Source: Octopus bimaculoides (taxonomy: Eukaryota). From it: 40,306 bases of DNA. This document shows, piece by piece, positions 1 to 36,660 of the stretch (positions within the stretch are counted from its first letter, which is position 1; each line of letters starts with the position of its first letter). The DNA lies in the NCBI RefSeq assembly GCF_001194135.2, contig NC_069004.1:34507037-34547342 (forward strand), in the 5' to 3' direction. The position numbers were made by a program, and so were the translations under genes. The notes below the pieces were generated by a model, which was not told the origin of the DNA, did no database searches, and saw nothing but the letters and a program-made list of their open reading frames with translations.

Positions 1-330
1 AGACTTAGAAATATTAATAACTCTATTTCTGAAAACCAGTGGATGGATTCCACTGAAATTAGATAAATAACCTTCGAGCAGATAGTCAGCAGCGCCGCCT
101 GGCTAAGGCTTGGCTACTCTGCATTGACAAGGGGCAACACCCTGAAACTAGTCTAGTCTGCAGATGCCAAACCAGCAGGGGGACACTGCTGACCTCCCCT
201 GTTCGAAGGTTATAAAGGACACAGGTTTCGTGTGTCACATAGCTAGCTAGAGGCGATGGCTTCTTGGAGCTAATTCACGGCAGCTTTCGTCCTAATTTTG
301 GGACTGCCATGTTGGCTTGGCGATAACTAT

Positions 331-7578: not shown

Positions 7579-7597
7579 ACCAACATTTTGCTGCTGT

Positions 7598-7668
7598 TTA
7601 GGGCTGCGAGCGAGCAGAGTCGTTAGCACGCCGGACAAAATGCTTGGCGGCATTTCGTCCGTCTTTAC
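7598..7668 (+). mobile_element. SINE A 5' fragment (left arm of a fold-back)
   Basis: ttagggctgcgagcgagcagagtcgttagcacgccggacaaaatgctt..., truncated just before the B-box. Confidence 0.9.
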
Positions 7669-7757
7669 GGAATTTGAATTCAGAAAGTAAGGACGAACGA
7701 AATATTGCTAAGCATTTCGCCCGGCGTGCTAACGATACTGTCAGCTCGCAGCCTTAA
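7669..7757 (-). mobile_element. SINE A 5' fragment including B-box (right arm of a fold-back)
   Basis: Reverse complement ttaaggctgcgagctgacagtatcgttagcacgccgggcgaaatgcttagc...ttctgaattcaaattcc. Confidence 0.9.
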
Positions 7758-11662: not shown

Positions 11663-11873
11663 TAATCTTTTCTACACTAGGCACAAGGCCCGAAAATTTT
11701 GATGAGTCGATTAGATCGACCTCAGTACGCAACTGGTACTTAATTTATCGACCCCGAAAGGATGGAAGGCAACGTCGACCTCGGCGGAATTTGAACTCAG
11801 AACGTAGCGACAGACGGAATACCGCTAAGCATTTCGCCCGGTGTGCTAACGATTCTGCCAGTTCGCCGCCTTA
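11663..11873 (-). mobile_element. SINE family A, full length, well preserved
   Basis: Reverse complement aaggcggcgaactggcagaatcgttagcacaccgggcgaaatgcttagcgg...gagttcaaattccgccgaggtcgac...ggccttgtgcctagtgtagaaaagatta. Confidence 0.95.
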
Positions 11874-12059: not shown

Positions 12060-12250
12060 GTGCTTGGTAGGTTTTTCTTCCGGTAATTAACGTTGTGAGT
12101 TCAAATACCACCGATGTCATCTCTGCCTTTCACCGTTTCAGGATCGATTAAATAAAATCTCATTCCTGTACTAGGATCGAGGTAATCGACTTGCTTCGCT
12201 GGTTTTTTTTTTATTTCTCAAGACTACTGACCTTCTACCAAAACTAGAAT
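12060..12250 (+). mobile_element. SINE family A, degenerate
   Basis: gttgtgagttcaaataccaccgatgtc...tgcctttcaccgtttcaggatcgattaaataa...ctaggatcgaggtaatcgac aligns with family A. Confidence 0.75.
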
Positions 12251-15627: not shown

Positions 15628-15903
15628 NNNNNNNNNNNNNNNNNNNNNNNNNNNNNNNNNNNNNNNNNNNNNNNNNNNNNNNNNNNNNNNNNNNNNNNNN
15701 NNNNNNNNNNNNNNNNNNNNNNNNNNNNNNNNNNNNNNNNNNNNNNNNNNNNNNNNNNNNNNNNNNNNNNNNNNNNNNNNNNNNNNNNNNNNNNNNNNNN
15801 NNNNNNNNNNNNNNNNNNNNNNNNNNNNNNNNNNNNNNNNNNNNNNNNNNNNNNNNNNNNNNNNNNNNNNNNNNNNNNNNNNNNNNNNNNNNNNNNNNNN
15901 NNN
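15628..15903. other. Assembly gap (N run)
   Basis: N characters between (CA)n and (TA)n. Confidence 1.
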
Positions 15904-15937
<34 letters not shown>

Positions 15938-15985
15938 TGAGAGGTTTGTAAGTATATGTGAGCCTATACAGCATATATACTGTCC

Positions 15986-16401: not shown

Positions 16402-16593
16402 TTCTTTTATTCATCTTTGTGTTTCAGTCATTTCACTGCAGCCATGCTGGAGCACCGCCTTTAGTCGAACAAATCGACACTAGGACTTATTTTTTGTAAG
16501 CCTAGTACTTATTCTACCGGTCTCTTGTCGAACCGCTAAGTTACAGGGACGTAAACACACACATACATATCCGTTGTCAAACACAGACGCACA

Positions 16594-24312: not shown

Positions 24313-24401
24313 TTCTTTTACTTCTTTTCCTTGTAATTTGATTGCGGCCATGCAGGAGCACCGACTTCAATCGAACAAATCGACCCCAGGACTAATTGTT
24401 T
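24313..24401 (-). mobile_element. SINE 3' segment (same family as 16402), running into a gap
   Basis: gattgcggccatgcaggagcaccgacttcaatcgaacaaatcgaccccaggactaatt. Confidence 0.85.
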
Positions 24402-26022: not shown

Positions 26023-26102
26023 TACATACATATATATACACCCACATACAGACATATTTATATATGCACACGTATGATGAATATATTTATAGTTGTAAGT
26101 AT

Positions 26103-26160
26103 TTACTTTCTACTTGTTTCAGTCGTTAGACTGCGGCCAAGCTGGGGCGGTACTTTGAAG
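26103..26160 (-). mobile_element. SINE extreme 3' fragment (same family as 16402)
   Basis: ttctacttgtttcagtcgttagactgcggccaagctggggc matches the start of the 16402 block. Confidence 0.7.
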
Positions 26161-27328: not shown

Positions 27329-27398
<70 letters not shown>

Positions 27399-27776
27399 NN
27401 NNNNNNNNNNNNNNNNNNNNNNNNNNNNNNNNNNNNNNNNNNNNNNNNNNNNNNNNNNNNNNNNNNNNNNNNNNNNNNNNNNNNNNNNNNNNNNNNNNNN
27501 NNNNNNNNNNNNNNNNNNNNNNNNNNNNNNNNNNNNNNNNNNNNNNNNNNNNNNNNNNNNNNNNNNNNNNNNNNNNNNNNNNNNNNNNNNNNNNNNNNNN
27601 NNNNNNNNNNNNNNNNNNNNNNNNNNNNNNNNNNNNNNNNNNNNNNNNNNNNNNNNNNNNNNNNNNNNNNNNNNNNNNNNNNNNNNNNNNNNNNNNNNNN
27701 NNNNNNNNNNNNNNNNNNNNNNNNNNNNNNNNNNNNNNNNNNNNNNNNNNNNNNNNNNNNNNNNNNNNNNNNNNNN
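27399..27776. other. Assembly gap (N run) inside (TA)n
   Basis: N characters. Confidence 1.
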
Positions 27777-34689: not shown

Positions 34690-34746
34690 AGAAGTTTGCT
34701 TTCCAACTGCATGGTTCCGGGTTCAGTACCACTGTGTGGCACCTTG
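34690..34746 (+). mobile_element. SINE family B head fragment
   Basis: agaagtttgctttccaactgcatggttccgggttcagtaccactgtgtggcaccttg. Confidence 0.85.
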
Positions 34747-34769: not shown

Positions 34770-34899
34770 CGTCTACCAAATCCATTCACAAGGCTTTGGT
34801 AGGATCGAGGCTACAATACTGGTCCAATGAGCCGCGCAGTGGGACTGAACTCGGAAACATTAGGCTGGGAAGCAAACTTCTTACCAAGCAACCACGCCT
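34770..34899 (-). mobile_element. SINE family B 5' half
   Basis: Reverse complement aggcgtggttgcttggtaagaagtttgcttcccagcc...gagttcagtcccactgcgcggc...aaagccttgtgaatggatttggtagacg. Confidence 0.88.
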
Positions 34900-34995
34900 A
34901 TCTATCTATCTATCTTTCTCTCTTTCATATATATATATTTACAGAGAGAGAGGGGAGAGAGAGTCAGAAAGAGATACAGACAGAGAGTGACAGAC

Positions 34996-35015
34996 AGATA
35001 GATAGATAGATAGAT

Positions 35016-35069
<54 letters not shown>

Positions 35070-35089
35070 GGAGAGATAGATAGATGGAG

Positions 35090-35145
<56 letters not shown>

Positions 35146-35170
35146 GGTCAGATAGATAGATAGACAGATA
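34996..35170. repeat. (GATA)n tetranucleotide microsatellite
   Basis: Direct reading. Confidence 0.95.
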
Positions 35171-36051
35171 GAAATCGATAAATGGATAGACAGATGCGCC
35201 ACCTTTTGCCTACCGAATACATCAACTAACCAAATCAACCAAATCAACACTTTGTCGTCAGGAGAATATCTTCTAACAGAGTAAATGAAATTTCACGCAC
35301 GTTTTTGTCAACAGATCGTCGTGGAACTCGCCTCCCAGCACCATTTAATTAACTCCTGATGATGCTCTTAATCACATACAAACGGCAATCTTGGAAGACA
35401 ACGCAAAATTTACATAGCAACTGTGTTCTAGCGTCATCTGTATTACAACTAACAAGTCAGTTGCTTAGTAACTATACATAATTAAACACTATGTCTATTT
35501 ACATTTGTTTCGGGGTTCTGTTGGTTGGCTGTGTGAATATGGTTTCTTTGTGTTTTTGTGCTTTATTTTAGTTTTTGTGAGAGGTTTTGTTGTTCTTTTT
35601 TTATGCTGTGACTAAGATATGTTTGGTCACCTGAAATGTTAGTGCCGTTGACCATGTTAAGACAAGTCATTATTGAAGTGGTCGGTCATCATTCGACGGA
35701 AAATCAGATTGAGCTATTTCTTAACACGTCTGTAGCGTGGTTAATGGACGGATACACGCACACACAGAGAAACCTCCTTCCCTACCACATTTCTCACTTA
35801 ATTCTTAATAAAGTATCAGTTATTCAGAAACGAACAAGCAAGGTGTTTGGTGCACCCTTGTTTATACATCTTGCAAACATAATCTTTATATGCACTCAAC
35901 ACCAGTCGATAATTGCGGGAGCCTGCTTCATAGAGAAAGGGCTTCTGCTCCCCAACTCACCGCCAAATAATTTTTATCTTCTGAATTTTTTAATCGAGCA
36001 ACGAAACATCACTTATTCAGAACCCCCATTAGGGCCTGCCTCTCTCTTTCG

Positions 36052-36083
<32 letters not shown>

Positions 36084-36140
36084 ACAGGAATGGCAGCAAA
36101 AGAAAGAAAGAGACCTCGATATTATGCAAATAGAGGAATT

Positions 36141-36358
36141 TATCTGAAAAAATGTGACACTTATTCAGTAGCCATGATAAAACTCCGAGGTTCGTATGCC
36201 AGGGTGGGGGGTCCACTCCAACATCTCTTCAGAATTTTTCAAAGGAATTTCCAGTGGCTGGATAACTGAAGAGATGTTGGAGTGGACACCCACCCTGTCA
36301 TCCGAAACTCGGAGTTTTATCATGGCTACTGAATAAGTGTCACATATTTTTACAGATA
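36141..36358. repeat. Near-perfect ~90-bp inverted repeat with a 33-nt spacer (MITE-like or hairpin locus)
   Basis: Arm 36141-36232 pairs with 36266-36358. Perfect blocks of 38 bp (36152-36189/36308-36345) and 22 bp (36211-36232/36266-36287). The ORF track shows the same peptide CDTYSVAMIKLR on both strands. Confidence 0.95.
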
Positions 36359-36373
36359 TGTGTGTGTGTGTGT

Positions 36374-36410
<37 letters not shown>

Positions 36411-36479
36411 GGAGATAGTATACAAGCATCGCATACGAAAAGCGTGAAGCTGATTGATGTGCTTTCGGTGCAAAATCGG

Positions 36480-36660
36480 GGATCCAGCACCATAGTTTGT
36501 TTAGGTCCCATTAACTTAGCAGATTATTAATAAAAGACTGATAGAATAAGTACCAAACTTGATAAAAGAAAATAATTCCTGGAGTGGGTTTGTTCGATGA
36601 AAATCTGACAGTGCTCCAACATGGCTACAGCCAAATGACTAAAACAAGTAAGAGGTAAAA
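36480..36660 (+). mobile_element. SINE 3' segment (same family as 16402), degenerate
   Basis: gatagaataagtacc...tttgttcgat...gtgctccaacatggctacagccaaatgactaaaacaagtaagag is the reverse complement of the 16402 block. Confidence 0.8.

What the first reader, a model, noticed from the sequence alone, without database searches (positions are those of the whole stretch)
36141..36358. Near-perfect ~90-bp inverted repeat: strongest structure in the window
The arms contain perfect 38-bp and 22-bp blocks. The internal differences cluster in 36190-36210 and are transversions or an indel, giving real bulges rather than G:U pairs. The 33-nt loop has its own tccag/ctgga mini-stem. The ends read TA-tctg...caga-TA, compatible with a TA-targeting MITE, but the sequence has no other copy here and is unrelated to the SINEs. 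If transcribed it would be a good Dicer or ADAR substrate (hairpin RNA, endo-siRNA). It could also extrude a cruciform.
Basis: partly seen in the sequence, partly recalled or inferred. Interest (0 to 1): 0.7.

Follow-up and report, generated by a model that had tools for sequence, protein, structure and literature searches.

The report
Solitary 218-bp palindrome, probably a MITE relic
The window really contains a 218-base near-perfect inverted repeat, most likely the remnant of a small non-autonomous DNA transposon or a local inverted duplication in repeat-rich non-coding animal DNA; nothing found here suggests it is more than ordinary.

Summary
Window 36141-36358 is a 218-nt palindrome with arms 36141-36232 and 36266-36358. 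The arms share 87 matches, 4 transversion mismatches and 3 single-base indels. The loop is 33 nt and has its own 5-bp mini-stem. It is the strongest fold in the window (RNA -152 kcal/mol, z = -18.5), and no second copy exists in the 40 kb.

The interpretation could not be settled. The palindrome stops exactly at TA...TA, is short, non-coding and about 93% symmetric. It sits beside a much older SINE copy in microsatellite-rich DNA. This fits a palindromic MITE of a TA-duplicating superfamily, like human Made1. However, TA is 10% of all dinucleotides here. The termini (TCTG...) do not look like canonical Tc1 or mariner ends as I recall them. Copy number, the decisive test, is untestable: a control showed that the databases hold nothing from this genome. 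A one-off inverted duplication next to the (TG)24 tract remains a serious rival.

There is no support for an RNA gene. Rfam gave no family hit, no difference between the arms preserves pairing, and T5/A6 runs would stop Pol III on both strands. An assembly artefact is unlikely, because the arms differ at 7 sites and the loop is asymmetric.

Verdict: real, ordinary, low interest.

The parts
36141..36142 (.). Left TA: the outermost paired dinucleotide of the palindrome, and a candidate target-site duplication
   Evidence: Read directly from the sequence. Base 36140 (T) and base 36359 (T) do not pair, so the symmetry ends here. TA makes up 9.9% of dinucleotides in the window.
36141..36232 (.). 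Left arm, 92 nt
   Evidence: It contains the perfect 38-nt block 36152-36189 and the perfect 22-nt block 36211-36232.
36233..36265 (.). Asymmetric 33-nt loop, 33% GC, with mini-stem TCCAG 36250-36254 / CTGGA 36258-36262 and a T5 run at 36235-36239
   Evidence: The centre of the mini-stem (36256) lies 7 nt from the centre of symmetry (36249).
36266..36358 (.). Right arm, 93 nt, ending in the right TA (36357-36358)
   Evidence: 87/94 aligned columns are identical to the left arm.
36359..36407 (.). (TG)24 microsatellite directly abutting the right end. It is context, not part of the palindrome.
   Evidence: (period 2, 24.5 copies).
36495..36660 (+). Old, diverged 3' part of a SINE copy, used as an age yardstick for the neighbourhood
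   Evidence: 72% identity to 16420-16560(-), with weaker matches to 24315-24397(-) and 26099-26148(-). No SINE head was found in the left flank 35850-36140.
36052..36081 (.). (TA)15 microsatellite, 59 nt upstream of the palindrome (context)
   Evidence: inverted repeat I5.

Best explanation
The palindrome is most likely the relic of a miniature inverted-repeat transposable element (MITE). It would be an internally deleted, non-autonomous cut-and-paste DNA transposon, reduced to two long terminal inverted repeats of about 90 bp joined by a 33-nt remnant of the interior. A transposase supplied in trans would have inserted it at a TA dinucleotide, which was duplicated. That is the rule for Tc1/mariner/pogo-type elements.

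Shown: the structure, its exact limits at TA/TA, its lack of coding capacity, and its youth relative to the neighbouring SINE.

Inferred: that it was mobile, that the TA pair is a target-site duplication, and that other copies exist elsewhere in the genome.

Today it is probably inert DNA. If a host Pol II transcript reads through it, the RNA would form a 92-bp imperfect duplex that dsRNA-binding enzymes such as ADAR could act on, but that would be a by-product and not its purpose.
For: (1) It is 218 nt long, 42% GC, has stop codons in five of six frames, and has no protein relatives.
(2) It is almost entirely palindromic, with arms 93% identical. Human Made1 has the same architecture: two terminal repeats around a short loop (PMC1784062).
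(3) The symmetry ends exactly at TA on both sides and the next bases do not pair.
(4) The arms differ at 7 sites, whereas the adjacent SINE copy is only 72% identical to its paralogue. The palindrome is therefore a later arrival in older repeat-rich DNA.
(5) Both outer ends stop at the same position of the repeat unit. This is expected for one element and not for two independent insertions.
(6) If the source is an octopus (my recollection of the SINE, not a test), Tc1-Mariner is the most abundant recently active TIR group there, and MITE finders report many palindromic candidates (PMC13282606).
Against: - No second copy, whole or partial, exists in 40 kb.
- The flanks match no other repeat in the window, so no paralogous empty site is available.
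- TA/TA at the ends has about a 10% chance expectation in this DNA. TA is also its own reverse complement, so it cannot be told apart from one more paired step of the palindrome.
- The termini read TCTGAAAAAATG. As I recall them, this is neither the CAGT of Tc1/pogo nor the AGGT-type end of mariner.
- No autonomous partner or transposase remnant is visible nearby.
Confidence: 0.45

Rival explanations
1. It is a one-off local inverted duplication. During replication or break repair next to the (TG)24 tract, the nascent strand switched template or folded back, and copied about 90 nt of neighbouring sequence in reverse. That left a single-copy palindrome with a short spacer, which has since picked up 7 differences.
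For: It is single-copy in the window. It directly abuts a long (TG)n tract and lies 59 nt from a (TA)15 tract; such sequences are known from general knowledge to stall forks and break. The loop contains a short inverted repeat that could nucleate a fold-back. The termini do not resemble canonical transposon ends.
Against: Fold-back priming on the mini-stem would put the centre of symmetry on that stem, but it lies 7 nt off-centre, with 17 unpaired nt on one side and 3 on the other. The exact TA/TA limits would be a coincidence of about 10%. In most animal genomes, near-perfect palindromes of this size are more often transposon-derived (general knowledge).
Confidence: 0.3
2. It is a hairpin RNA gene, or a hairpin co-opted as one. 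Its transcript would be processed into small RNAs (hpRNA or miRNA-like) or serve as a dedicated ADAR substrate. This does not exclude a transposon origin.
For: The fold is very stable on both strands (-152 and -148.5 kcal/mol). Made1-type palindromic MITEs did give rise to the mir-548 family in humans (PMC1784062).
Against: No Rfam family reaches its threshold. The best matches are generic single-hairpin miRNA models at 40 bits against a gathering score of 94, and they score equally on both strands. All four substitutions between the arms give purine-purine or pyrimidine-pyrimidine clashes, with no G:U-preserving or compensatory change. A 92-bp stem is far longer than a Drosha substrate. T5 at 36235-36239 and 36347-36351 and A6 at 36147-36152 would terminate Pol III on either strand. 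If the host is a mollusc, a survey of 32 mollusc species found no convincing endo-siRNA production (PMC12479628).
Confidence: 0.05
3. It is an assembly artefact: a contig end folded back on itself in a draft short-read assembly.
For: The window is a gapped draft, with 2072 N and very many microsatellites.
Against: Fold-back artefacts give identical arms joined at an exact palindromic k-mer. Here the arms differ at 7 positions, the 33-nt loop is not self-complementary, and unique sequence continues on both sides.
Confidence: 0.05
4. Two independent copies of an unrecognised dispersed repeat landed head-to-head, like the inverted SINE pair at 7585-7757.
For: Head-to-head repeat pairs do occur in this window.
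Against: Both arms begin and end at the same positions of the unit and are 93% identical, whereas the SINE pairs are 74-79% identical with ragged ends. No further copy of the unit exists in the window.
Confidence: 0.05

Closest known systems
Made1 (Hsmar1-derived palindromic MITE of primates; source of the hsa-mir-548 family), PMC1784062
   Same: A short, non-coding element made almost wholly of two terminal inverted repeats around a small loop. It is flanked by TA and folds into a near-perfect hairpin if transcribed.
   Different: Made1 is 80 bp, with 37-bp repeats and a 6-bp loop. It has thousands of copies, a known autonomous parent and documented small RNAs. Here the arms are 92 nt and the loop 33 nt. 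Copy number, parent and expression are unknown, and there is no sequence similarity.
Tc1/mariner/pogo-derived MITEs in general (for example Stowaway-like elements)
   Same: TA at both ends, size range, AT-rich loop, and location in non-coding repeat-rich DNA.
   Different: The terminal bases TCTG... do not match the termini I recall for Tc1/pogo (CAGT) or mariner (AGGT-type). TA alone is weak evidence here.
Drosophila hpRNA loci (long-hairpin endo-siRNA genes)
   Same: A long, nearly perfect intramolecular duplex.
   Different: hpRNA stems are several hundred bp, are conserved with their target genes, and need a dedicated siRNA Dicer/Ago2 pathway. None of this is shown here, and that pathway appears to be absent in molluscs (PMC12479628).
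Short-inverted-repeat-mediated palindromic duplications (fold-back or template-switch products)
   Same: A single-copy palindrome with a short spacer, next to break-prone simple repeats.
   Different: The centre of symmetry does not sit on the short inverted repeat. Such events do not predict TA limits.

Membership tests
MITE (miniature inverted-repeat transposable element) | Short (under about 800 bp) and without coding capacity | tested here: met
   218 nt. Five of six frames carry stops. The one open frame has no relatives.
MITE (miniature inverted-repeat transposable element) | Terminal inverted repeats | tested here: met
   Arms of 92 and 93 nt, 87/94 columns identical.
MITE (miniature inverted-repeat transposable element) | Target-site duplication flanking the repeats | tested here: inconclusive
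   TA is present on both sides. However, TA is self-complementary, so it is indistinguishable from one more paired step, and it is 9.9% of dinucleotides in the window. No longer direct repeat flanks the element.
MITE (miniature inverted-repeat transposable element) | Several to many copies with unrelated flanks | not testable with these tools
   No other copy in 40 kb. All external searches were empty, but so were the multi-copy SINE control and ten window ORFs. The source genome is therefore not in the databases.
MITE (miniature inverted-repeat transposable element) | Terminal sequence shared with an autonomous element that encodes a transposase | not testable with these tools
   No transposase-like ORF in the window and no genome to search.
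Tc1/mariner superfamily derivative | Canonical termini (5'-CAGT for Tc1/pogo, AGGT-type for mariner) next to the TA | tested here: not met
   The ends read TA|TCTGAAAAAATG and CATATTTTTACAGA|TA. The canonical termini are recalled from memory, and lineage-specific variants exist.
Known miRNA or other RNA family (Rfam 15) | Score at or above the family's gathering threshold | tested here: not met
   0 hits at gathering thresholds in the whole window. The best permissive hit is mir-3923 at 40.4 bits against 94, scoring equally on both strands.
hpRNA / endo-siRNA locus | Phased 21-23-nt small-RNA duplexes mapping to the stem | not testable with these tools
   No expression data are available.
Structured RNA under selection | Compensatory or G:U-preserving changes between paired positions | tested here: not met
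   All 4 substitutions are G/T or C/A transversions that break pairing. This compares only the two arms, since there are no orthologues, so it is weak evidence.
Fold-back (short-IR-primed) palindromic duplication | Centre of symmetry coincides with the priming short inverted repeat | tested here: not met
   The mini-stem centre is at 36256 and the palindrome centre at 36249, with 17 against 3 unpaired nt on its two sides.
Assembly fold-back artefact | Identical arms joined without a non-palindromic spacer | tested here: not met
   7 differences between the arms and an asymmetric 33-nt loop.

The most novel reading that the evidence does not exclude
The most novel reading my evidence does not exclude is a single-copy, lineage-specific long-hairpin RNA locus. 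It would be transcribed within a Pol II unit and would act as a dedicated dsRNA substrate. It might be heavily ADAR-edited, or processed into small RNAs in an animal group where endogenous siRNAs have not been detected.
Probability: 0.04. Interest if true: 0.6.

Novelty: new member of a known kind. Interest (0 to 1): 0.15.

Why it matters
As it stands, it matters little. Palindromic transposon relics and small inverted duplications are common in repeat-rich animal genomes.

It would matter modestly as a marker of a recently active TA-inserting DNA transposon family in this genome, if copies are found. It would also be a natural 92-bp dsRNA-forming site if the locus lies in an intron or UTR of an expressed gene. 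That would make it a candidate site of hyper-editing, or a raw material for new small-RNA genes as happened with Made1 and mir-548. It is also a potential fragile site beside a (TG)24 tract.

Tried and rejected
1. Exact-word scans for a 26-mer from the 38-nt block and for the 21-mer inner block. I scanned the metagenome contigs (both words), the prokaryotic genome contigs (both words) and the viral contigs (26-mer only). All gave 0 hits. This was expected, because these collections are not animal genomes.

2. The translated open frame of the hairpin (66 aa) against 5.8 billion protein clusters gave no candidate. Against 1.84 billion representatives with phmmer it gave three hits. The best, P0001, is a highly repetitive EukProt protein. 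It matches at 35% identity over 37 aa and its E-value is inflated by 7 repeated stretches. The other two are repetitive proteins of different composition. I rejected all three as noise.

3. Control: a translated SINE ORF gave no hit, and ten window ORFs looked up by exact sequence were absent. The databases therefore cannot speak to copy number in this genome.

4. The Rfam permissive scan returned only generic hairpin matches far below threshold.

5. I looked for a nested insertion that would give a paralogous empty site. The flanks are unique apart from a SINE tail downstream, and the left flank has no SINE head. It is tempting to think that 277 nt (59 nt plus the hairpin) split a SINE-internal (TA)n(TG)n. 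This cannot be supported, because microsatellite junctions make any short duplication uninformative and the 277-nt unit has no terminal repeats.

6. Alternative target-site duplications (TTA/TAA, TTAA, 8 bp) do not fit the flanks.

7. The clustering of arm differences is not significant (P = 0.08).

8. Full-text searches for k-mers of the hairpin and of the SINEs found 0 papers. The supplement of PMC13282606 has no matching sequence.

9. Taxon: the SINEs look to me like octopus SINEs, but this is recollection only. No tool confirmed it.

10. I did not run a Pfam scan of six-frame translations around the locus. By eye, the frames are microsatellite translations without any long clean ORF.

Full report
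**Observation**

Reading 35900-36600 and the repeat finder show a long inverted repeat centred near 36249. A global alignment of 36141-36232 against the reverse complement of 36266-36358 gives 87 identical columns, 4 mismatches and 3 one-base indels.

- The perfect 38-nt block (36152-36189 = reverse complement of 36308-36345) is confirmed, and it never occurs in 100 dinucleotide-preserving shuffles.
- The perfect 22-nt block is 36211-36232 paired with 36266-36287.
- The internal differences are at 36190, 36195, 36199, 36206 (indel) and 36210.
- The 33-nt loop (36233-36265) contains TCCAG/CTGGA at 36250-36254 and 36258-36262.
- The symmetry ends at TA on each side, and bases 36140 and 36359 (both T) do not pair.

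As single-stranded RNA the 241-nt stretch folds at -152.2 kcal/mol (z = -18.5). As DNA it folds at -97.2 kcal/mol (z = -22.4). No shuffle came close. A sliding 240-nt scan of the whole window ranks it first: -150.6, against -114.5 for the next independent locus and a median of -47. The apparent clustering of differences is not significant (P = 0.08).

**Context**

The window is a gapped draft of a eukaryotic genome. It has 2072 N, GC of about 35%, and dozens of TA, TG, TC and AGAT microsatellites. It carries several SINE families and no convincing protein-coding ORF.

From memory the SINEs resemble those of octopuses. No tool confirmed this, so every taxon-dependent remark below is conditional.

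The palindrome lies 59 nt downstream of a (TA)15 tract, and its right end directly abuts a (TG)24 tract (36359-36407). About 90 nt further on begins the 3' part of a SINE copy (36495-36660, + strand). That copy is only 72% identical to its paralogue at 16420-16560. The left flank holds no SINE head and is otherwise unique in the window. The arms of the palindrome are 93% identical, so the structure is clearly younger than its neighbourhood.

**Search for relatives**

- No other copy, whole or partial, exists in the window.
- Exact-word scans with two arm words found nothing: both words in the metagenome and prokaryote-genome collections, the first word also in the viral collection.
- The only open frame across the element (66 aa) has no relative among 5.8 billion protein clusters.
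- A full phmmer pass over 1.84 billion representatives gave three weak hits to repetitive proteins. Their E-values are inflated by repetition, and the best is 35% identity over 37 aa. I regard them as noise.
- A control query from a SINE that has two copies in this window was equally blank, and ten ORFs of the window are not in the collection.

These resources therefore hold nothing of this genome. The empty results say nothing about copy number, and the one decisive test of the MITE idea could not be run.

**RNA-gene reading**

- Rfam finds nothing at curated thresholds in the whole window.
- With permissive settings, the only matches over the hairpin are single-hairpin miRNA models at about 40 bits against thresholds of 72-109. 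They score the same on both strands, which is what any perfect hairpin produces.
- The four substitutions between the arms all create purine-purine or pyrimidine-pyrimidine clashes. None is a G:U-tolerated transition. The sample is tiny, but there is no sign of selection on pairing.
- A T5 run in the loop (36235-36239), another in the right arm (36347-36351) and an A6 run in the left arm (36147-36152) would stop RNA polymerase III on either strand (sequence; termination rule from general knowledge). Any transcript would have to be Pol II read-through.
- If the host is a mollusc, a survey of 32 species found Dicer-type endo-siRNA signatures at least five-fold below those of species with siRNAs. 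The authors suggest that editing deals with dsRNA instead (PMC12479628). That makes the endo-siRNA suggestion unlikely and the ADAR suggestion the more plausible fate, if the locus is transcribed at all.
- Cruciform extrusion in duplex DNA is disfavoured by a 33-nt spacer (general knowledge), although the loop is AT-rich.

**Most likely nature**

The anatomy is that of a palindromic MITE. It is short and non-coding, and it is made almost wholly of two terminal repeats around a small asymmetric interior. It is bounded by TA, and both arms stop at the same position. Human Made1 is the textbook parallel, with two 37-bp repeats, a 6-bp loop and TA insertion (PMC1784062).

In Octopus vulgaris, Tc1-Mariner is the largest group of recently active TIR elements. 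MITE-finding software there reports 65 recent "families" with a single insertion each (PMC13282606). That figure is a reminder that solitary palindromes are easily labelled as MITEs.

Three points count against the MITE reading:
- TA makes up 9.9% of dinucleotides here and is self-complementary, so the "duplication" is weak evidence.
- The termini TCTG... do not match the Tc1/pogo or mariner ends I recall.
- No partner element is visible.

I put the MITE explanation at 0.45.

**Main rival**

The main rival is a one-off inverted duplication produced by template switching or fold-back repair beside the break-prone (TG)24 tract. I put it at 0.30. Its weak point is that the loop's short inverted repeat, the obvious primer for a fold-back, lies 7 nt off the centre of symmetry.

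**Minor rivals**

- An assembly fold-back artefact is unlikely, because the arms differ at seven positions and the spacer is not palindromic.
- Two independent head-to-head insertions are unlikely, because both arms share both end points and are far more alike than the inverted SINE pairs seen elsewhere in the window.
- A purpose-built hairpin RNA gene has no positive support.

**Verdict**

This is a genuine and striking hairpin-forming sequence of a familiar kind. It is either an unclassified palindromic transposon relic or a small inverted duplication, lying in non-coding, repeat-rich DNA. Novelty is limited to being a possibly new family member. Interest is low (0.15). A genome-wide copy count and an orthologous empty site would settle its origin, and RNA data would settle whether it is ever a dsRNA substrate.

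Noticed in passing
window 7585-7757: Two pieces of one SINE family lie head-to-head with no spacer. 7585-7668 is the reverse complement of 7668-7756 at about 78% identity. Together they form the second strongest fold of the window (-114.5 kcal/mol per 240 nt).
   Followed up: partly
window 11705-11805 and 12090-12191: The same SINE family occurs again as an inverted pair, 74% identical and 285 nt apart. Recurrent inverted SINE pairs are potential dsRNA sources, analogous to inverted Alu pairs.
   Followed up: no
window 67-215: A 149-nt unit is bounded by 15-nt inverted ends ATAACCTTCGAGCAG / CTGTTCGAAGGTTAT. It folds with z = -6.5 and could be another small TIR element.
   Followed up: no
window 34690-34746 and 34825-34881: Two tRNA-related SINE heads lie in inverted orientation (79% identity, 79 nt apart), immediately upstream of an (AGAT)52 array at 34992-35195.
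   Followed up: no
window 15628-15939 and 27359-27670: The longest 'inverted repeat' listed by the repeat finder (312 nt, 98%) appears to be an assembly gap (N run) matched to another gap plus microsatellite, judged from the X runs in ORFs over those coordinates. It looks like a tool artefact rather than a structure.
   Followed up: partly
window 36052-36407: The order (TA)15, 59 nt, palindrome, (TG)24, SINE tail mimics a SINE-internal (TA)n(TG)n split by 277 nt. No SINE head lies upstream, and the junctions are uninformative.
   Followed up: yes
window 36190-36210: All four substitutions between the arms are G/T or C/A transversions and none is a transition. With n = 4 this carries no statistical weight.
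   Followed up: partly
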